A DNA stretch of 64,000 bases from Fimbriosthenelais zetlandica (Eukaryota). Each line of letters begins with the position of its first letter. The first letter of the stretch is position 1. This document shows positions 6,001-57,000 of the stretch, piece by piece. The translations under genes and the position numbers were made by a program. The notes beneath the pieces were generated by a model that was not told the DNA's origin, ran no database searches, and saw nothing but the letters and a program-made list of their open reading frames with translations. The stretch spans positions 15,996,001-16,060,000 of the forward strand of contig OZ365112.1 in NCBI GenBank assembly GCA_977030845.1, read 5' to 3'.

Positions 6001-9000
6001 CTGGCCTGACTCCACCTCACCGTCAGTTGTTGCATGATGGTGGAGTCTGCACTGCTTATGCGAATTAAGTGGCACTTATGCTATAAATCCTTTGATTTCC
6101 GCTCTCATTATCTTTAATTTTAATTCTTCTGTAATGGGGATGATCTTCATTAATTTTCGGGTTAAAAATTATTAGGGGCCTGTATTTCAGAAATTTTAAA
6201 TACTTCTGGAATCACTAGAAGGGTTTGGGTATTATGTTACAGATTCGAAAATGTATTCCTATAGGTCGGAAATAAAACGGTTTACACATAGATTATGACA
6301 CTCTGGTTGTCCATCCCGTGCATACGTGATACTTGAATCCTTTGATTGGGATGTTAATGGATTTGTTATGATACCAGCACGCAGTGCATTGCTCTTATAG
6401 AGAGACAGTCTGCACGTGCACACGAGATGTCATCCCTCTGATGTGAGAGGCTGGTATGAATGGCTTATTATAGGCTACTGCTGAGCGTGTCCCGCTATGG
6501 CCAGGACCCAACATATGGAAGCACCCTCTACCTACCTATGTGATCATCCAGGTGTGTCCACCCCCGATCTCACCTTCTTCCATTATAGATGATCGCCCCT
6601 CCCTACACAGGAGGCCTCCCTGTAGAAGTGCTCCATCCCCCACCCCCCTTCCTCGCAACCATACACATTCTAACGTGGGCCTTATCTTCTCAAGCCAAAG
6701 CTTTGATGCCATATGCTCTAACGCTTTACCACAATGCTTCCTCTACTAGATAAAACAATACTGATCGTGTTTACCCCCGACTACAGGCCCTCAAACACGG
6801 GGCTCACACCCTCTTGTTATCTTTAATAAATGATCAAAGAGGTTCCTTGTTAATTGCCTCTTTATTAGCCCCCGCCCAAACATAACTTACCCTTAACAGA
6901 GATAAACACCCCTCCAACGCCCTACAAAATATACATGTGTCTACCTTTGCTGTTAGAAAACCTTTCATTTGAGGAATGAGGAAAATCCAATATGTCACAT
7001 AAAAATGAAGCAAAAGCATTTTAATTGCAAGCATTCGGTCATAAAATCTCACTACGAGTGAAAAGACCGAGTAAAGATAAATATCACTAAATATCTCTAG
7101 TCGAGAATGGCTATCTCATTACATTATGTATGTGCACTTATAAAACAAGGGTGTCTGTGACATAAGAGTTGGAGGTTTTCTTTACAATTTATAGATGCTG
7201 GGGGCATTGGTTTCCATGCTTCACCAGCTCCATTCATGTCAAATGATGCTCTAGAGACAGCCCATAAAGTTGGTATACCAAATTAGGGCTCTCCTCTTCA
7301 GACATCTGCAGTTGTTGCTTTAAGGAAAAAAAATGGGCTGCATCATTCAATGAATAACTAATGTGCCTATTATGAAACAAAATCATTTACAGGTGAATCA
7401 CAATGGCAGGTTTAGATATATACATCTTGGAAGAAGAGTCCATCCAACTGTCATAGACTTGGCACTCTTTTCACCCAACTATTTTCATCTATTTCATCTA
7501 ATTACGGCTTGGTGTGTGGGATAAAAGTAGGTTCCCATTGGTGACTGAGATAGAGAGATACTTTACAGTAATGTGCCCTCCGTTACTGTATAAGCATGTC
7601 ACGGTTTATGAATCTCTATATCCCTCCATCAAATAACCTCCAGGTCTCCAAACTTAATGAGAAGCCTTGTATAGTCGGAGGTCACAGTGGAAGAATGATC
7701 ACATAAAAAGACATTCTGTCACTGAAACGTAATGATGACAACTTTCACCATTCACCTCATTGAAACTAACCTCAAAGAAACAAATTTTAACCAATTAAAG
7801 GGAAACATTGCCCTCTCAAATGAAATTATGAACATTAAAGCATCTTTTGCCCCTTCCCCCGGTAACTGACATTATTTTCCCTCTGATTGAATTCCTTGAA
7901 TCCTATTGAGGATTCTTGTCATTGCTCTAAGTGGTGGTGACAGTAAATTACAGAGGCTCCTTTTTATCCCCAAATCGCCATTTATCAAACTTAACATGTG
8001 TAAAAAAAAGTGGTTATTGAGCAAGGGTGAAACTCAATGAATTTGCATTGAATTCTATACGGACATGACACTGATATATGTGGATGTACAATGTTAATCG
8101 TATCCCATAAGATTAACTGATTAATGCCCTATTGTGCGTGGAATGGACTAGAAAGGCTGCCCAGGTTACCCGCCAGTGCCATTCAGATGCAACAACCCTG
8201 TTGCGATTCTTAAAGCCTGACAATTGGCAGCACTTGGCATCAAGCTGGAGTTCAAAGGCGTTGTAAGCAGGCGGCGTGGTTCCTCACAAAGGGTGCCACA
8301 TCCATCAGGCTCTGCAATGACGTTACACATTCACCTCCCATTCACCACTCTCAAAACAATATTAATCCCCCAGACACTGCTACCTGCCATAAAGAAACAT
8401 CCCCATTTAAAACCATACCACTGCTTCTCCTCAGCTCTTTCTATAGATTGCTGTTTTCATCTGCTGAAGTGATCATCTTGGAATTGTCACCTTGTGACGG
8501 ATGTCGCAAACGGGCGGATCAATTACCTGAGTCCCTGGGACTTTCTCTTCCTTTGATGCTATCGCTGATAGATGGCGCAGCGGTGACCGTTGAGCCTGGT
8601 CCCTGCAAAGAATGTAGCAGTTGCATGTTTTACCACTACGTGACGTAGATACGAAATTGGAGAAGGGTAAAAAATGATATACCTTCACATTTATCAGAGT
8701 GGAGCGCTATAAACATTTGAACGTGTTGGGCCTCTTTTCATTTCGTTTTTTTTAATTTTTTTTAAAATTAAGGGAGAATACAGTCTATACGATCACTTTC
8801 CCGATGAAATTGTCTCGTGTGTTAGAATGAATTGAGGAATACAGGTGTAAGAGGGGGCATTAAAGCATGGAGGCAGTGAGGGCATTAAAGTCAAACTGCT
8901 TTCTGTATTTACAAGGGGAAAGGTCCAATAATCCAGGATGACCCGGCTAGTACCAATCGGCCAGTCAATTTTATTTATAACCCGGTCCTAAGAGTGGGCT

Positions 9001-45000: not shown

Positions 45001-48000
45001 TAGTGAAGATGAACACTAAATATTCGGAGTGCAAAATCATTGCACTTCTTGGTGATCTTTAACAAATTGTTAAAAATAGCCATCATAATTATTTTGATAT
45101 TGTTGCTTCTGGTGCTGCATGCATTAGCTATTTCTTAATATCTGTCACATAAACTAGAATAACAAATAAAGTAATGTATGTTACCTTTTGTGTTTTGCAG
45201 GTCATGGGGGAGTGAATCAGCTAGGTGGCGTGTTTGTGAATGGGCGCCCCCTGCCTGATGTAGTTCGCCAGAGGATTGTGGAACTGGCACATCAAGGCGT
45301 CAGGCCTTGTGATATCAGCAGACAACTTCGGGTTTCACACGGCTGTGTTTCAAAAATACTTGGAAGGTGGGTACATGAGTCCATCCCAGACGCCTAAATA
45401 TCCCATATGAATGTTTTATCAAGAGTAATATTACCATAATTTCACATGATAATGCAATTGATTCTCCATAATTGCAAATATTTAAACTGCATTTTAGTAT
45501 ATCGATCAAGGATATAATTTTCTATGAGTTTAACATAAATTACACTTTTTAATTTATAATATACAGTCACGCAAATACACGCAGGCACGGTCTAATAATT
45601 AAAGAGTGTGAAATCTAATTATGCGTATTGCTTTAGGGAATTACACAAAATAATAGAAAAAGTAATTTTTCATCTGGAAATAGATAAACAATTAAATATT
45701 ATGCGCATTGCACTTGCTTTATATGATGTTAACAATGTTACATGTCTATTGGTAAAGAGGTAACAGGCTGGTTCACACAAAAGAATAACGCTTTTACTCA
45801 CAATATGAAAACTTTTTTGTTCCATATCACTGAATTATATTGCATGCATGCTTTCATGTTTAATATTGTTTATGTAATTTCACTAGGCTTGATTGTATAA
45901 ACAGTTTATTTTAGCCATAGGTAAAAAAGGTGCCGGGACGCTTGAAAGAAACCAGTGCTTCCTATTTGATAGGGTCAGGGTGTTTGAAGCTGGAGATATA
46001 ATGTGTGTTTTCAGTTGTAGGTGCTCGCGATGTATCCCTATAAACCACAGTTGATTAAGCTCCCACTTTGATGAATATTTCATTCCATTTAGTCCTCTAT
46101 GAATGGCGCTGATTCACATGCATGGGACCCATTCACCGGCAAGTGAACGCAGCGCGAACTCTGTTTATGTTTTCGCAAGAGTTGAATCCAATAACTCGCA
46201 TAGAAATTCCCCCAAGTGCCCAACAAAAATGCTTGACAAAAGACCTGACATGCGTTGGGGGTTGTGTGTGTTAGGCCTGCTATAGAGTAGTGAGGGTTTT
46301 GTCCAGGTGGAAAATGAGGTTAGTCTTACTGGTTTTGGTCGAGGCTTTACTTGTGAAATGAAGCAGGGAATAAAGCAGAGGGTAACAGGTGTATTATGAG
46401 GTTGAGCGTTCCATCACGTCAAACCCCAGGGACAACATGACGGAAGGCGTGAAAGGATCAGGTTTAATCTGCAAAAAGAAGTCGTGCATTATTCATATCA
46501 AACAAATGTACCATGCATGTTTAGCTTGTGTGCGGTGGCCATGCATTTAGAACCCATCTCAGCTATATATAACATATTTGTAACAGATTTATATGGTTTG
46601 TTTGCTTGTTAGCAACATATCCCACTTAGTATCCGAGCCTGGAGGATTTTATGACTACTTGTATCCATCCCTGTATACAACAAGTAAATAAGTTGTCAGC
46701 CAGGCTACTCAGTTGTTTATTCCCGTGAGTCAACCCACCGAATTCCTGAGCAGCTCCCAGCACTGAGATCTAATAGACCGCTGGCCGGTACTATAGAGGC
46801 AGACGAGTAGCTCTTACTGCAGCCCCTCCTCCCGCCGGTCACAAGCCATTACAGCATGGGACCTGCTCCTTCGATCTAGGCCACTAGCATGGAGCAGCTC
46901 TTTCAACATCAAAGCCTGCCGACGCTTAGAGCTACTCACAAGACACAAGTGTTTGTAAATGAGAACCAATCATGGCCACCACATCAAAGGCCTCCAGGTC
47001 TAATCCAGAAGATCCCCCTCTAAAACCGTCCGGATCGTCCTCCCTTGTAAGGGTTGGGGGTCAACGGGTATATATTTGTTAGTAGTGACAGGATTGGAAA
47101 TGGAGAAGCCCCACCACCCCCTGCATCCCCCGCCATCCCACGGCATACTTAGAATGTATCTGCATCCTTTGACGATGGCATGAAAAGAATCCTTACTTTC
47201 ACATCCTTTGATCTCCCGCATTTATTCCTTGCTTTATGACAGACTTCGGGCAACATTCTTGGAATTCATGATGAAATTGCCAACGGCTCTTTCTTTAAAG
47301 CTCCTTTATATCTAACTTTGTAAAGCTGTGAATTATCAGATCCATTTCCCTCACTATTATACATTTCTATTGATTTCAAAGTCAGAACAGTTCTAGAACA
47401 AGGTTGAAAAATCCCGAGTTTGTCGTCATCATAATTGTTCATGATTTCAAAGAAAGCAAGTCATTTTCAAGCCAGATCTCCATCCGAGCAGATCCCCAGA
47501 TTAGATCCTCTATGGCATTGCCAGCCCTAACTTTCTATTGATAGAGATGCGTGAAAAGCAGTCATTTGCTGGTGATTATTTAGCGCCCGATCTAACGAAC
47601 ATTGATCGTCAAAGCATTAACTCATTTGTACACTCGTGTCGATCAGCCCTCCCCCTAATTAGATTATTTCCTATTCATCAATGGGAGGCGCATAAATGAT
47701 GCAATTAATTACTGGCCTTGGCAAGTGTGGAGGATGGAGGGGGAGGGACGGGGGGCTCTATTACAGGCCTGGCACTCTGACAGACAAAGGCTCACAGAAG
47801 GTGGCGTTAACTTGCTCTGTCATTATTTGGGGATCAAGCCATGTCATCAAAAACACCAAATACTCACTTGAGAGCTACTCGAGCTGACTAGTCTAATAGT
47901 GTGATAGGAGGCGGTGGGAAAAACAGGGTGAAGTGGGTGCTGGGTGAGGGTCAAGAGGTTAGAGGAGGGTGAAGACAGGGCTGCCATTGAAGGGGTGAAA

Positions 48001-51000: not shown

Positions 51001-54000
51001 TCACGTGTTTTGTTTGGAGGTCATGTGACTATAGGTAGACCTGTCTCTGGGTAGGCCTCCATGTTGACAGTGAACACCCAGAGGGCCTGAGGTCTTTAGA
51101 TAAGACACTGTCTCAATGATACGCTGCCAGGTCCCTCAGGTCCCAGTGATGTGATTGGAACGGGTACAGGGCTCTATTCCACTTAGTTCCGATTTCGTTT
51201 CCCAAGTTATTCCATTCCATACAGTCCTTTAAATCCCGTGAGACAAAGCACCATGCCGGGCACCATGGTGAATATCTCTTGTAGCTCTAGACATGCTTTT
51301 AACTCATTTCACTTTGCATTTATGTAATTTTGCCAGATGATTATTGGAAATGGCTCATAATGTACTAATACTTAAGTAGAAATTAACTTCACTTTCTCAC
51401 AGGAATTGGCGAGGGAAACTGCTTGCAGAAATCACGCTATGGCAGGTGGTGGAAGACAGGAAATGACCTCACGGTGGCGGAAGGGAAAAGCGGAAGTGGC
51501 AACATACACTAATGTCCTTGGGGATTCCCCTTTTCTATCCTTTTCCAGATATTATGAGACCGGGTCGATCAAACCAGGTGTGATCGGAGGGTCCAAACCC
51601 AAAGTAGCGACCCCCAAAGTTGTAGATGCCATAACCAAATACAAACAGGAAAACCCAACCATGTTTGCTTGGGAGATCCGTGATCGCCTCTTGGCTGAAC
51701 AAGTGTGTACATCCGACAATATACCGAGCGTCAGCTCAATCAATAGGTAAGCCGCGTTATGATCTGTTCACTTACACCTTGACATACTAATCCAGTGGGG
51801 TGTTTCCCGTCCCGCTCTCCCTATTGCAGGTACTATGAGACAGGGTCTATAAAACCCGGAGTTATCGGGGGATCGAAGCCAAAGGTAGCCACACCCAAAG
51901 TTGTAGATGCGATCTGCAAATATAAGAGAGAAAATCCCACTATGTTCGCTTGGGAAATCCGTGACCGGTTATTGGCAGAAAATGTCTGTGATCAAGAAAA
52001 TGTTCCGTCTGTCAGCTCGATCAACAGGTAAGGTTCAATAAGCGTGTAGATTTTGTGCCGTGACACCCTGCTAGTGCTTTAAGTGTGTACTTCCTATACG
52101 CATGCGCACAGCCGGCATGATGAGTGAAATTGAGAGATAACGTGCACCAAGGAGCATGACTTGAACCACCTAAGTATTTTTGCATTATTTTAAAACCCTT
52201 GATTTTTTATTTTGAATTAACATAGTTGAAATATGATTGAAAAAATCTTGTTGATCTCCCCCCACTGCTATATTTTAGTCTAAAATATTCGGGTATGTAT
52301 TTTATTACCATTTGTAAGGAATAATGGGATATATATCTTACCTTAACTGCCTTTGGTCAATCATCAATCATATTTCAAGATGTTATCAAGTTGTGTCCCA
52401 ACGATTGTATTAGAGGCTGTCAATGTTATCAGCGCCATAGCATTGGCAGCCATACCACATCTAAAGTGCATGTATTGGCTCTAGTGGATAGGCTTGCATG
52501 CCGATAACCCCGCCACCTTTAAGGCTGAAGGGTCAATCTGTCAATGTCAGAATGTACATCTCTTGCGGCAGGCACATAATGTGGCAGTAACATGAAACTA
52601 GGCCTGTCAAGGTAAGCCCGCCCCCTGACGTTGGGCCTGCTATTCTTGCCGCGAGGTCTACCTGCTCGTGGTGCATACCCCAGACGAAATGATTAAATCC
52701 CTGCTCAGACAGGTGCTAAAAGTTGTAAGAAAAACATGCATTGTTACCAAATCAAACCACCCTGTACAGGATGTCTTATCATGTTGGGATCTGACTGGAA
52801 GTCGGTCGGTTAAATCATTTAACGAATTCAACAATGTTCTGTAGGTATTAATGTGTGCAATTTGAAACTTTTGGGAGGGGAAAGACATGACAATATCAGA
52901 AAATACATCTGCGGGTGACTAATGAAAAGATATCTAAGTACATGGGGTGTTTTCCATATCTACATGGTCAGTCGAGGGGCTGGGGTAAAGATAACGGAGT
53001 CCAATACGGGTATATTGTTAAAGGAGGCTAAAGACATACTGGACAACGGTGGTGGGAAGGTGACTTCTCTGGACCTTTTAACAACTGAATGTCTGGGATT
53101 GATTTGGAAGCAATGGGCCTAACGGTTGTTTTTGAGTTAAAGCTGTTGTGCACGCACACCTCTATGGGCGGTAGGGCCTTTGATGTAGGACGACACCTCA
53201 GCTTAATGATGATGGCGGGGTAGGGCCATATTAGACCCAGCCTTTACCTGAGAAGAACTCATCATGGCGGGCCTGGAGTTGGGCCTTATTGTCCTCGAGT
53301 CAAGAGGTGTCATACAAACTGACAGCGAGTCCACATCATACACATCCTATGGGAACTGGCGAAACAAGACCTAAACCCATTGAGGCCCTATATAGCGTGA
53401 CGCTGCTGTGATTTGGACCCTTCTAACTCACGTCCTGATAGAGCCCCATTCTTGTAGTCATGACGTTGGTACCTTGTCGTGACGAGGCAACTGCTACAGC
53501 ACGCCAAGTCGCTACATCACGTGCCTATTGTCTCAGTTGGTTTTAGCGTGTCTGTGGGCCCCTATAATACTATATCATTTCCCCGCCTACTTACCTGAAA
53601 CAGGCTGGTCTTCCACTAATAGTTTTCTCCCTTCTCATTGCCATGGTCTTTGATTGCCAAAGCTGTTTCCTCCGACACCTTTCAATTAGCACTCAATAGG
53701 GCTTTAAACCATTCCTTCTATAGGCCTACATCAAAGGCCTTAGCTTATTCCGACCGATACAATGTGATCTATTCATTATTCTATTAGTTGCTACTGCTAC
53801 GTGCCCATGAACGGAACCCAGCGTTTAGATGGAGATCATATTGTAACGATCTACACTAATGCATAAAGGGAACTTAGACAGTATAGAACAAATGTGAATA
53901 TTCTTAACCATTGCATGAGTGCATATTGCATGAGCACGTCAGCCATGGTAACATAGCAAATTGATGGCAATTACCATTTATCAGTTAGCCTGCTTGGTTG

Positions 54001-57000
54001 ATAAGTGACAACAAATTTCCAATCAATGAAATATTTATCTAAATTCTATTTTATAAAAAAAATAAGAGTGCATTTTGAGTGATAAGAGTCCCCCTTTGAA
54101 ATATCCCTTTTGGAAAAGCAACTTTTGAAAACAAGCCCAAGCCTCAATGTATTCTACCAATGCCTATTAAACGTCCTACCAAAAAAGAGGAGCTTTGATG
54201 ATGTGATTAGTTTTAAGGACTTCTAACCGGAATGATAATGGAAATGTCTTTAGTGAATGACTAAGTGACAGCAGGAAGACGGATATGCATGTCATCTTCA
54301 ACCTGACCTTGTACTGAGAATGAAAACTTGGGCCTTTGTGAAAACAGAAAAGCTCAGACCAGTTGGCAACATTTACTAATCCATGTATACAACTACCAAA
54401 AGTTTCTTTTACACGCAGCTGATAAAAATGTGTCAAGTTATGGTCCACAATGACTCCGGATATGAACTATCTATGGGATTTTTCATATCATTATTTTGTT
54501 GGTATAAGTTGTATACCTTTAGGTCCTGATGGATCACGTTATAACCCTAAACCATATATATGTTTCTAATCATTTTGGCTCCAGCCACCAATTTCATCAC
54601 TGAATTGCAAAACTCATGATTATTTTCCAAATTTGCATGCACCAATCAATAAAGAAAATGCATGTTAGGAAAAAAATTACTGAAACTATTTGAAAATGGA
54701 TCGATGGAGAAGATTTGAGCAAAGAGTTTTTGGTGACGGAAAGTTTATGTTTTTCAGAATTTCGCGCAATCTGGTCTGGGCGTCCCAATCGAGGGATGGT
54801 GGGAACCAACAAAGTCCTAACCAAGCAGGCTCACCATCCGAATGGCAAGTGTCCTTATCAATATATCATCCTACAGATATCGTTCTGATTGACCCAGACA
54901 CTTTGACCTAAAAGAGAACACACCCCGAGAGGAAAACAACCCCATCATGCCATCATTTACAATGAATATCTTAAGCAGTTCACAGGACATCTATTAGTCG
55001 AGCAATATAAAAGATGTTAGCTAGACTGATTCGCAACAGATTTTTGGACATTGGGACAATGCAATTTATAGCATAGTGCTACATAGCCGGGGAAATCTAG
55101 TAAAGAGTCGAGAAGTGATATGTGTATTCGTATCGAGGGTACATCTGACGGGACTACATCATTTTTTCCCTACTAATTAAGGGTTTTTTTTATTGGCCCA
55201 GAATTTAAAAATGGTTTTGGGGCAACATGGCCATTATTGACAGCTGACCTAGTGAAGGGTTGATATTTCATGTGGGACGTTTTCCCTTCTGCTTATCAGA
55301 GCGCAGCCAGGCCTCCTGCTTTATCACAGCAATTGGCGCTACCGCCAGTGGATGTCCTGCATGGATTCAAAATATCAAAACTGAATCCCACTCATCTTCC
55401 TTTTAGTCTACATGACCCATCCTTTTTTATCTTCTATACAGCTACCTCTTTTCTCTTTCCATTGACATTGTCGTGTAGACAGATTTTATATTATAGATGT
55501 GGTCTGATATTGTGCTATTTTCTGAAGTATATTGAGATCTTTGTTCGCGTCCCCTGACTTGGATTTTCTATGTAGGAAGGCCCTGTGTTTTTATTCTGGT
55601 CAGTAGTCTGGCTCACGGTTACTGGCCGTTAGTAGTATATGGAAAAAAATATATTCAGCTCCGGTTCATCTTTCATCATCGCCATTAACATTACAATGTA
55701 AGCTAGACAGAAATAGTATGTCATTAACGTAAATCAATTTTAAGTATCTGGCTCTGAATGATGGTTTTTAATGAATAATGTATTGGTTGCTTCAGGATTG
55801 TGAGGAATAAAGCCGCTGAGAAGGTGAAGACACCAGGTCCTAACAGTCCTGTCGGGGCTGGTAATGCCACACCTGTAATAACACAGGCTCCAGCGGCACA
55901 CACCAGCCCCCATCAGCCTTATACTATCTCAACCATCCTGGGCATGCCCACCACAGCCACCGACGTCAACGGTAACAAGAGGCGGCATGACGAAACAGGT
56001 AGGGTATATTAAAGAAACTACTACTATTAGCTTTATTTCCCTATCATACTTCCACAAACATGGATCAATTTTAGATTTTTTTTTATTTCTGTAAAGTAGT
56101 AAATGATGTATAAGGAGATTGGTTTTTATGGTCGTGCTGCCTGTGTCTCCTGTCGAGAATGACAGACGACAATGTTAATAATACATGGATCAATGTATCA
56201 TGTATTGTTCCTCCATCATTCCAACTCGGGGCCCGTGCCAAGAAATGCATATCTCCAGCCTTACTGAGCATGCTTTATCTGGACATAAAAACGGCCTCAT
56301 GAAAATAACCACAGTTTTTGTTCCAAGTTGTCCATAAAATATTGATGGGATGTCTCGTAAATGCGACTACAATGTACATGGAATGTTCTTCATCCTTGGC
56401 TCAAAGTGTGCCTCTACATTCTGACAGAATCTATATGTTCTGGCGTCTGTTATTTGGCTCTGCCCTTGGTCGTCTTAATGTGCGGCTTGCATCAACACGC
56501 ACTCTCTTTCGCTCTTTCTCTAACTCCTACCTCATCTCCACGAATCCCATTCCTATTTTGTCAAGCACTTCGCCTTTTTTCCCCACCCAGTCTCCCATTT
56601 TGTCTCCCAGTAGTAATAGTAGCAGACCTAGTACTAGTGTTCATCTGCCCTATCTCAAGGTTGGTAGCGCGTGAAAACAACAACACGGAAATGGGCACAC
56701 TACAGCTGTGGGCTGTGAGCGCATGGGGGCGCAGTGATCAGACAAGTGTGTCCAGACACAACCAGCTCTGATATCAACACTGTCGATTTATTTCACCGCC
56801 CATGACTGCCGCTCACCTCCATAACACACATATACTATTTATAGACTGAATTATGTCTATATAAGGGCCAATCTGTGTATATATAGCACATTCTATTCAT
56901 TATATTCACACCTTCTCCCATTCGTCTCGACTACATTCGAAATTGACCGATATTTTACGGTCTGTCTCTGTTGAGCAATTTCTTGGATCAGTCCATAGAC

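What the first reader, a model, noticed from the sequence alone, without database searches (positions are those of the whole stretch)
51549..52027. Tandemly duplicated, probably mutually exclusive exons swap the C-terminal half of the Pax2/5/8 paired domain
Seen: two 198-nt, phase-2/2 exons 83 nt apart, each with intact splice sites and each encoding linker + RED subdomain, while only one PAI exon and one octapeptide exon are present. By my hand count of 65 full codons, 26 are identical, 32 differ synonymously and 7 differ in amino acid (T/C, Q/R, Q/N, T/D, S/Q, D/E, I/V). Inference: heavy silent divergence with near-identical protein means the duplication is old and both copies are under purifying selection, so one gene likely makes two paired domains. 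Known: the recognition helix (SVSSINRIVR) is unchanged and the differences fall in helix 4 and the helix 5-6 turn, so partner binding, backbone contacts or redox sensitivity (3b gains a Cys) are more likely to differ than base readout. I do not recall a duplicated RED exon described for Pax2/5/8, but I could not check the literature.
Basis: partly seen in the sequence, partly recalled or inferred. Interest (0 to 1): 0.9.

Follow-up and report, generated by a model that had tools for sequence, protein, structure and literature searches.

The report
Twin alternative exons in Pax2/5/8
A key developmental regulator gene (Pax2/5/8) in this probably annelid genome carries two side-by-side, anciently diverged and still-selected versions of the exon for the second half of its DNA-binding domain. 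It therefore very probably makes two slightly different DNA-binding proteins, an arrangement also present in a ribbon worm and in crustaceans and not found in the literature I could search.

Summary
Two 198-nt exons (51549-51746 and 51830-52027) lie 83 nt apart, each with an AG/GT-flanked open frame. Each encodes the linker plus RED half of a Pax2/5/8 paired domain. Of 65 full codons, 26 are identical, 32 differ silently and 7 change the amino acid.

Both copies are functional. A related genome (L008) has the same a-then-b pair, 99 nt apart, with unalignable introns. Orthologous copies show pN about 0.02 against pS 0.6-0.8.

The nemertean Tubulanus has the same a-then-b pair, 58 nt apart. Its RefSeq isoforms X1 and X2 differ only in this exon.

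Malacostracan crustaceans have a comparable pair, 47 nt apart in Petrolisthes. Lingula instead has a tandem pair of PAI exons, used alternatively in RefSeq isoforms. Lamellibrachia keeps only b. Lingula keeps only a, and all mollusc proteins sampled carry a.

An AU test rejects a duplication confined to the window's lineage (p = 1e-4).

No sequencing run was listed, so splicing in this species is inferred, not shown. Including both exons keeps the reading frame, so frame does not enforce exclusivity; a steric block by the tiny intron is plausible but unproven.

This is a new member of a known kind (tandem-duplicated alternative exons). No paper describing it was found.

This scan's earlier notes record comparable tandem exon pairs in other genes of this genome (Vsx, AP-2, PDPR).

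The parts
45201..45367 (+). PAI-subdomain exon of Pax2/5/8 (single copy). It ends in AG, which is completed to an Arg codon by the first base of 3a (A) or 3b (G).
   Evidence: It is the only PAI-like match in the window (tblastn E = 9e-33) and is flanked by ttttgcag / GTGGGT.
51549..51746 (+). Exon 3a: linker plus RED subdomain, 'a-type' (..[21 protein letters not shown]..).
   Evidence: It matches the ortholog in L008 at 63/66 residues (pN 0.023) and is closest to the single RED exons of brachiopods and molluscs.
51747..51829 (+). 83-nt intron between the two alternative exons. It has a GTAAGC donor, a TACTAAT branch-point-like motif with its A at +44, a 30-nt pyrimidine-rich tract and a CAG acceptor.
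   Evidence: The equivalent introns are 99 nt (L008), 58 nt (Tubulanus) and 47 nt (Petrolisthes).
51830..52027 (+). Exon 3b: linker plus RED subdomain, 'b-type' (..[21 protein letters not shown]..).
   Evidence: It matches the ortholog in L008 at 65/66 residues (pN 0.020) and Tubulanus exon B / isoform X1 at 62/66. It is also b-type in Lamellibrachia.
55796..55998 (+). Shared exon 4. It completes the RED recognition helix ([10 protein letters not shown]) and carries an octapeptide-like YTISTILG and a basic NKRR motif.
   Evidence: It is 69% identical to the L008 exon 4. The motif fits the lophotrochozoan octapeptide pattern Y[TS]IxxILG given in PMC5333810.

Best explanation
Exons 3a and 3b are a tandem-duplicated pair of alternative exons in a single Pax2/5/8 gene. 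A transcript takes one or the other between the PAI exon and exon 4. The gene therefore makes two paired domains that share the PAI half and the recognition helix. They differ at seven RED positions: paired-domain residues 85 and 89 in helix 4, and 107, 110, 111, 112 and 114 in the helix 5-6 loop.

Shown: the anatomy; purifying selection on both copies; the same a-then-b pair in a related genome and in a nemertean whose annotated isoforms swap exactly this exon; and that the a/b split predates the window's lineage.

Inferred: that this species splices them alternatively, one per mRNA. Also inferred is the means of exclusion, most likely interference between the 3a donor and the 3b branch point/acceptor across a very short intron, helped by cell-type-specific factors. 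The functional consequence is also inferred: altered DNA-backbone or partner contacts, or redox behaviour, rather than base readout.
For: - Exact anatomy and codon counts.
- Orthologous pair in L008 (a at 8069-8266, b at 8366-8563, 99-nt intron), with unalignable introns. pN/pS is 0.023/0.84 for a and 0.020/0.62 for b, against a-versus-b pN of about 0.10-0.11.
- Tubulanus polymorphus locus L003: a-like exon, 58-nt intron, b-type exon. RefSeq isoforms X1 and X2 are both 574 aa and differ at 12 residues, all within 213-263.
- Tree: a-clade with support 89/84 and b-clade with 84/78. Holding the window and L008 copies together as one clade is rejected, p-AU 1e-4.
- Double inclusion would leave the first RED copy without the part of its recognition helix that exon 4 supplies. 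The model helix starts at exon residue 61 and runs off the exon end, and exon 4 starts IVRNKAAEK.
- Malacostracans show the same design. Petrolisthes has a pair 47 nt apart. The krill model uses only type 1, while the crayfish and mantis-shrimp RefSeq isoforms use only type 2.
- Precedent for a half-domain swap in a transcription factor: FoxP, PMC3002244.
Against: - No RNA evidence exists for this species; no sequencing run could be listed.
- At 198 nt (66 codons), including both exons or neither keeps the reading frame, so frame and NMD do not enforce exclusivity.
- The 83-nt intron looks like a competent intron on its own, with a consensus donor, a TACTAAT motif, a pyrimidine tract and CAG. 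In L008 the best branch-like motif is 62 nt from the donor, so a purely steric block is not assured.
- RefSeq isoforms are model-based predictions, and I could not inspect their supporting reads.
- No full-length transcript-derived protein from a close relative with either exon was among the hits retrieved.
Confidence: 0.8

Rival explanations
1. Both exons are included together, giving a Pax protein with one PAI and two RED subdomains in tandem. The 83-nt intron would be removed like any other.
For: Inclusion of both keeps the frame, since 198 nt is 66 codons. The 83-nt intron has all the consensus signals. Several deposited crustacean gene models contain both copies: Petrolisthes, Procambarus, Portunus and Idotea. 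COE genes show that a duplicated exon can become constitutively included (PMC2394523).
Against: The crustacean double models are automatic or low-quality predictions; one is flagged LOW QUALITY and one UNVERIFIED_CONTAM. Evidence-based isoforms in Tubulanus carry exactly one copy each. The first RED copy would lose the exon-4-encoded part of its recognition helix. Introns of 47-58 nt in the other taxa are near or below usual minimum sizes (general knowledge).
Confidence: 0.07
2. Only one copy is used in this species. The other is a conserved-looking relic, or serves a non-coding role such as a decoy exon regulating splicing.
For: Many lineages manage with one copy. Lamellibrachia has b only. 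Lingula has a only at the DNA level, and all mollusc proteins sampled are a-type. No b-type full-length transcript from a close relative was retrieved.
Against: Both copies have intact frames and splice sites in two species whose introns no longer align. Amino-acid change is about 30-40 times rarer than silent change in each copy. A non-coding role would not preserve the protein sequence this way.
Confidence: 0.08
3. The two exons are alternative, but the choice is set by competing RNA structures (docking/selector type) or by coupling to the alternative first exons and promoters, not by the short intron.
For: In L008 the best branch-like motif lies 62 nt from the donor, which is long enough for splicing in most animals. 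Silent sites in the first 27 codons of 3b are unusually conserved between the two species: 19 of 27 codons identical, against 9 of 26 in 3a, Fisher p = 0.013, a post hoc test. That would fit an exonic regulatory element. The gene has several alternative first coding exons (scan note s1-223655).
Against: Inverted-repeat searches around the pair in the window, L008 and Tubulanus found only short, weak pairings of the number expected in 2-kb stretches. None was conserved in position. Tiny inter-exon introns recur in every taxon examined (47-99 nt), which points to distance as the common factor.
Confidence: 0.3

Closest known systems
Tubulanus polymorphus (Nemertea) LOC141903911, RefSeq isoforms X1 (XP_074648388.1) and X2 (XP_074648389.1)
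   Same: It has the same gene family, the same exon (198 nt, phase 2/2) and the same order, with the a-like copy first and the b-type second. The intervening intron is tiny (58 nt). The two annotated isoforms differ only within this exon. Window 3b and Tubulanus exon B share the diagnostic C85, R89 and D110-Q-E (62/66 identical).
   Different: The Tubulanus a-like copy is more divergent (pN 0.13 against window 3a). An independent duplication in Tubulanus is not statistically excluded (p-AU 0.25). It exists only as an automatic annotation; I found no publication.
FoxP forkhead-domain alternative exons (Santos et al. 2011, PMC3002244)
   Same: [quoted passage not shown]
   Different: It involves a different fold and gene family. 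The FoxP case is documented with transcripts in many phyla, whereas the Pax2/5/8 case rests here on genomic and annotation evidence.
Pax6(5a), the Pax3/Pax7 Q+/Q- forms and other paired-domain splice variants (reviewed for chordates in PMC4488758)
   Same: Alternative splicing changes the paired domain and thereby the balance of PAI versus RED DNA recognition.
   Different: Those are insertions, alternative splice sites or cassette exons, mostly affecting PAI or the linker. None replaces the whole RED subdomain with a paralogous exon. That review of chordate Pax2/5/8 splicing reports no duplicated RED exon, and RT-PCR showed a single PAI-RED isoform in amphioxus.
Alpha-tropomyosin exons 2/3 type of steric mutual exclusion (general knowledge, not checked in a paper here)
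   Same: Two adjacent alternative exons whose intervening intron places the branch point too close to the upstream donor for the intron to be spliced.
   Different: In the window the candidate branch A is 44 nt from the donor, in an organism whose minimum is unknown. In L008 it is 62 nt. The steric mechanism is therefore a hypothesis here, not a demonstrated membership.
Lingula anatina Pax2/5/8 tandem PAI exons
   Same: The same gene family uses the same design: a tandem, same-length pair of exons 52 nt apart, used alternatively in RefSeq isoforms.
   Different: The N-terminal (PAI) half of the paired domain is duplicated instead of the RED half. Lingula has a single, a-type RED exon.

Membership tests
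Pax2/5/8 subfamily gene | Bipartite paired domain (PAI plus RED) most similar to Pax2/5/8 | tested here: met
   The best solved relatives of exon 3b are Pax5 (1k78, E = 2e-34) and Pax8 (2k27, E = 3e-33), ahead of Pax6 and Prd. The PAI exon is 96-98% identical to Lingula and Tubulanus Pax2/5/8.
Pax2/5/8 subfamily gene | Octapeptide followed by a basic (KR-rich) signal downstream of the paired domain | tested here: met
   Exon 4 encodes YTISTILG and then NKRR. This fits Y[TS]IxxILG plus a basic signal, as described for lophotrochozoan Pax2/5/8 in PMC5333810.
Pax2/5/8 subfamily gene | Partial homeodomain | not tested
   The downstream exons were not mapped. PMC5333810 states that lophotrochozoan Pax2/5/8 lack it.
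Mutually exclusive exons arisen by tandem exon duplication | Adjacent exons of equal length, equal phase and clear sequence homology, each with its own splice sites | tested here: met
   Both are 198 nt and phase 2/2, with 74% nucleotide and 89% amino-acid identity and AG/GT on both.
Mutually exclusive exons arisen by tandem exon duplication | Both copies maintained by purifying selection | tested here: met
   Orthologous comparisons with L008 give pN 0.023 and 0.020 against pS 0.84 and 0.62. The introns are not alignable.
Mutually exclusive exons arisen by tandem exon duplication | Exactly one of the copies present in each mature mRNA | not testable with these tools
   No sequencing run was listed for this genome. 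Indirect support only: Tubulanus isoforms X1 and X2 carry one copy each.
Frame/NMD-enforced mutually exclusive exons | Including both or neither exon shifts the reading frame | tested here: not met
   Each exon is 198 nt (66 codons), and the 3a-3b junction reads AG+G = Arg in frame. Joining exon 2 directly to exon 4 is also in frame.
Sterically enforced mutually exclusive exons (short donor-to-branch-point distance) | The branch point of the inter-exon intron is closer to the upstream donor than the spliceosome allows | tested here: inconclusive
   The best branch-like motifs lie at +44 (window), +62 (L008) and +33 (Tubulanus). The Petrolisthes intron is only 47 nt in total. The minimum for these animals is unknown.
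RNA-structure (docking/selector) controlled mutually exclusive exons | Conserved competing intronic base-pairings around the variable exons | tested here: inconclusive
   Only weak inverted repeats of 12-21 nt were found, none shared in position between the window, L008 and Tubulanus. The search was limited to about 1 kb on either side of the pair.

The most novel reading that the evidence does not exclude
The RED-exon switch is an ancient feature of spiralian, and possibly protostome, Pax2/5/8. An a/b pair would have existed before annelids, nemerteans, molluscs and brachiopods diverged, and was then lost reciprocally. Molluscs and brachiopods kept a, some annelids kept b, and this annelid lineage and Tubulanus kept both. 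Malacostracans carry a comparable type-1/type-2 pair, whose halves match the single exons of chelicerates and insects respectively, and Lingula evolved the same trick for the PAI half. If so, the 'single' Pax2/5/8 genes compared across protostome evo-devo studies carry non-equivalent DNA-binding halves. The two RED versions could have distinct target preferences or cofactor use.
Probability: 0.45. Interest if true: 0.72.

Novelty: new member of a known kind. Interest (0 to 1): 0.58.

Why it matters
Pax2/5/8 is a core regulator of sensory organs, excretory organs and brain boundaries, and it is widely used as a marker in comparative developmental biology. A conserved switch that replaces half of its DNA-binding domain means that one gene can supply two regulators. 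In-situ probes and knock-downs that ignore the exon choice would merge these two.

It also means that the 'orthologous' RED subdomains compared between phyla may in fact be paralogous exons.

The pair gives a natural, minimal seven-residue contrast for asking what the RED subdomain contributes to target choice. The recurrence of tiny introns (47-99 nt) between such pairs in four phyla offers a testable case for steric control of exon choice outside vertebrates and flies.

Tried and rejected
1. Direct RNA evidence. Two run searches, one over an 801-bp stretch (RNA runs) and one over a 10-kb stretch (any kind), listed no run, so read laying could not be used.

2. Transcript-derived proteins from close relatives. 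None with a junction to PAI or exon 4 and a window-like a or b exon was among the proteins retrieved in four protein searches (scan).

3. More relatives. Three contig look-ups returned no DNA because the sample files were too large. In one of them (SRR22297272), an uncharacterised 54-residue ORF abuts the b-type ORF just upstream, which could be an a exon but could not be read.

4. Frame-based exclusivity. Rejected, because 198 nt is a multiple of three.

5. Docking/selector RNA structures. Inverted-repeat scans gave only weak, non-conserved pairs.

6. Recent duplication or gene conversion. Rejected, because silent sites are saturated (pS 0.81) and a lineage-specific clade is rejected.

7. Literature. 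Seven full-text searches and four papers read (PMC4488758, PMC5333810, PMC3002244, PMC2394523) gave no description of a duplicated RED exon in Pax2/5/8. Subscription-only papers are not covered.

8. Organism identity. Exon 4 is only 39% identical to Lingula and 69% to L008. Earlier scan notes call the genome annelid; I did not verify this independently.

Full report
**Observation**

The sequence is as described. Exon 3a (51549-51746) and exon 3b (51830-52027) are each 198 nt. Each is preceded by a pyrimidine tract plus AG and followed by GTAAG, and they are separated by an 83-nt intron.

Both translate without stops to 66 residues of linker plus RED subdomain. Nei-Gojobori gives pS = 0.81 (saturated) and pN = 0.10.

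The window holds one PAI exon (45201-45367) and no third RED-like exon. It holds one exon 4 (55796-55998), which continues the recognition helix (IVRNKAAEK) and carries an octapeptide-like YTISTILG.

Exon residue i corresponds to paired-domain residue i + 56, judged by alignment with 6PAX and 1PDN. An AlphaFold2 model of 3b (mean pLDDT 76, and above 85 over the helical part) has helices at exon residues 22-34, 40-49 and 61 onward.

**Are both copies functional?**

A protein search with 3b found an a-type fragment (P0293) on a 452-kb ENA contig. That locus, L008, has the same arrangement: an a exon at 8069-8266, a 99-nt intron, and a b exon at 8366-8563. Its exon 4 is 69% identical to the window's.

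Outside the exons, the two species align only at splice signals. Within the exons, a versus a gives pN 0.023 and pS 0.84, and b versus b gives pN 0.020 and pS 0.62. Every a-versus-b comparison gives pN of about 0.10-0.11.

Both copies have therefore been kept as protein-coding sequence, as two distinct orthology groups, over a divergence that saturates silent sites.

**Wider distribution**

An exhaustive HMMER search with 3b returned gene models that contain two RED copies in a row. These come from the crustaceans Petrolisthes cinctipes, Procambarus clarkii and Idotea baltica, and later from Portunus.

*Crustaceans.* At the Petrolisthes locus the two 198-nt exons are only 47 nt apart. The krill model uses only the first type, while the crayfish and mantis-shrimp RefSeq isoforms use only the second.

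*Nemertean.* In Tubulanus polymorphus an a-like exon and a b-type exon are 58 nt apart, in the same order as in the window. RefSeq isoforms X1 and X2, both 574 aa, differ at 12 positions, all within residues 213-263, which is exactly this exon.

*Brachiopod.* Lingula anatina has a single, a-type RED exon across its 55-kb gene, but two tandem PAI exons 52 nt apart. Its RefSeq isoforms use one or the other, and they differ at 7 residues, all within 30-81.

*Other annelid.* Lamellibrachia satsuma has only a b-type exon, with no a-type within 7.4 kb upstream or 8.5 kb downstream.

*Molluscs and a second brachiopod.* Full-length Pax2/5/8 proteins from molluscs (oysters, mussels, abalone, limpet, chiton, squid) and from Terebratalia all carry a-type RED. 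I did not inspect mollusc genomic DNA.

*Unnamed loci.* Locus L002 has only a-type, while L001 and L004/L005 show only b-type within their short contigs.

**Age of the duplication**

A maximum-likelihood tree of 30 RED sequences has only 65 columns, so resolution is low. It gives an a-clade (89/84) holding window a, L008 a, Tubulanus a, brachiopods and molluscs. It gives a b-clade (84/78) holding window b, L008 b, Tubulanus b, Lamellibrachia and two unnamed taxa.

Forcing the four window and L008 copies into one clade is rejected (p-AU 1e-4). Forcing the two Petrolisthes copies together is also rejected. Forcing the two Tubulanus copies together is not rejected (p = 0.25).

The groups were named after a first look at the data, and convergence under constraint cannot be excluded with so few variable sites. 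The safe statement is that the a/b split is older than the window's lineage and that b-type orthology with Tubulanus is clear. A single origin before the annelid-nemertean-mollusc-brachiopod divergence, followed by reciprocal loss, is the most economical reading but is not proven.

**Mechanism**

Frame does not enforce exclusivity. The 3a-3b junction (AG+G) and the junction of exon 2 directly to exon 4 are both in frame.

Double inclusion would leave the first RED copy without the exon-4-encoded part of helix 6. That argues against a useful PAI-RED-RED product.

The recurrent feature is the tiny inter-exon intron: 83, 99, 58 and 47 nt for the RED pairs and 52 nt for the Lingula PAI pair. In the window, the best branch-like motif (TACTAAT) has its A 44 nt from the donor. 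In Tubulanus it is at 33 nt and in L008 at 62 nt.

By general knowledge of alpha-tropomyosin-type steric exclusion, such distances can prevent the donor of the first exon and the branch site of the second from being used together. The limits for these animals are unknown, however, and the L008 spacing is not obviously prohibitive. I therefore rate steric interference as the leading but unproven mechanism.

Scans for competing RNA pairings found nothing conserved. One hint of an additional exonic signal appeared in a post hoc test. Silent sites in the first 27 codons of 3b are more conserved between the window and L008 than in 3a, with 19 of 27 codons identical against 9 of 26 (p = 0.013).

**Function**

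The b-type residues Arg89 and Asp110 match deuterostome Pax2/5/8, while a-type has Gln/His and Thr/Ser at these positions. Cys85 is b-specific and is present in every b-type exon seen.

The part of the recognition helix encoded in the exon is identical in the two copies, and the rest is shared. A difference in base readout is therefore unlikely. Changes in charge near the backbone, in partner surfaces or in redox sensitivity are plausible, but these are inferences only.

**Comparison with what is known**

Tandem exon duplication giving alternative exons is a classical mechanism. FoxP offers a direct parallel, with a duplicated exon for the second part of its forkhead domain (PMC3002244). COE shows the alternative fate of constitutive double inclusion (PMC2394523).

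Reviews of Pax2/5/8 splicing in chordates (PMC4488758) and of Pax genes in lophotrochozoans (PMC5333810) do not mention a duplicated RED exon. Seven full-text searches found none.

The arrangement is, however, already visible in RefSeq isoform annotation for Tubulanus, and for the PAI half in Lingula. I class it as a new member of a known kind.

Earlier notes of this scan report several other tandem exon pairs in this same genome and call it an annelid. I used these only as leads.

**Limits**

- There is no RNA evidence for this species.
- The species identity is unverified.
- The RefSeq isoforms are computational models whose read support I could not inspect.
- The exon tree rests on 65 columns.
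- Three relatives' contigs could not be read.

Noticed in passing
L007:23737-24119 (Lingula anatina, GCA_001039355.2 LFEI02000028.1): Lingula Pax2/5/8 has two tandem PAI-subdomain exons (165 coding nt each, 71% nucleotide identity, 7 amino-acid differences) separated by a 52-nt intron. RefSeq isoforms use one or the other (..KILSR versus ..KILGR). This is the same design as the RED pair but applied to the other half of the paired domain.
   Followed up: partly
L006:38754-39196 (Petrolisthes cinctipes, GCA_033782935.1): Malacostracan Pax2/5/8 has two tandem RED exons only 47 nt apart. The first matches the chelicerate/myriapod type and the second the insect type. Deposited gene models for Petrolisthes, Portunus, Procambarus (flagged LOW QUALITY) and Idotea wrongly splice or read both into one protein.
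   Followed up: partly
window:51831-51911 compared with L008:8367-8447: The first 27 codons of exon 3b keep 19 of 27 codons identical to the related species, against 9 of 26 in exon 3a (Fisher p = 0.013, post hoc). This is possibly an exonic splicing signal.
   Followed up: partly
window:17731-17802 and window:30520-30594: Short tblastn matches to the N-termini of Lingula isoform X1 ([10 protein letters not shown]..) and of a b-type transcript-derived protein and crustacean models (..MDLT..YRY.HN..MEY..).
   Followed up: partly
L003:20211-20241 and L003:20410-20440 (Tubulanus polymorphus): A 31-nt inverted repeat with 81% complementarity pairs the middle of RED exon B with the intron about 120 nt downstream. 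It is the longest pairing seen near any of the pairs. It has no counterpart in the window or in L008.
   Followed up: no
L009:4001-12238 (Lamellibrachia satsuma LSAT2_004510): The deposited gene model has the b-type RED exon and exon 4 but no PAI exon, and it has a long, low-complexity, probably spurious N-terminus. The PAI exon must lie more than 7.4 kb upstream.
   Followed up: no
P0231 (Rhagoletis zephyria 'Pax-2-like'): This fly record carries a RED sequence of the mite/chelicerate type (..ADYKKSNP..ADGICDADNIP) rather than the insect type. It is possibly contaminant DNA in that assembly.
   Followed up: no
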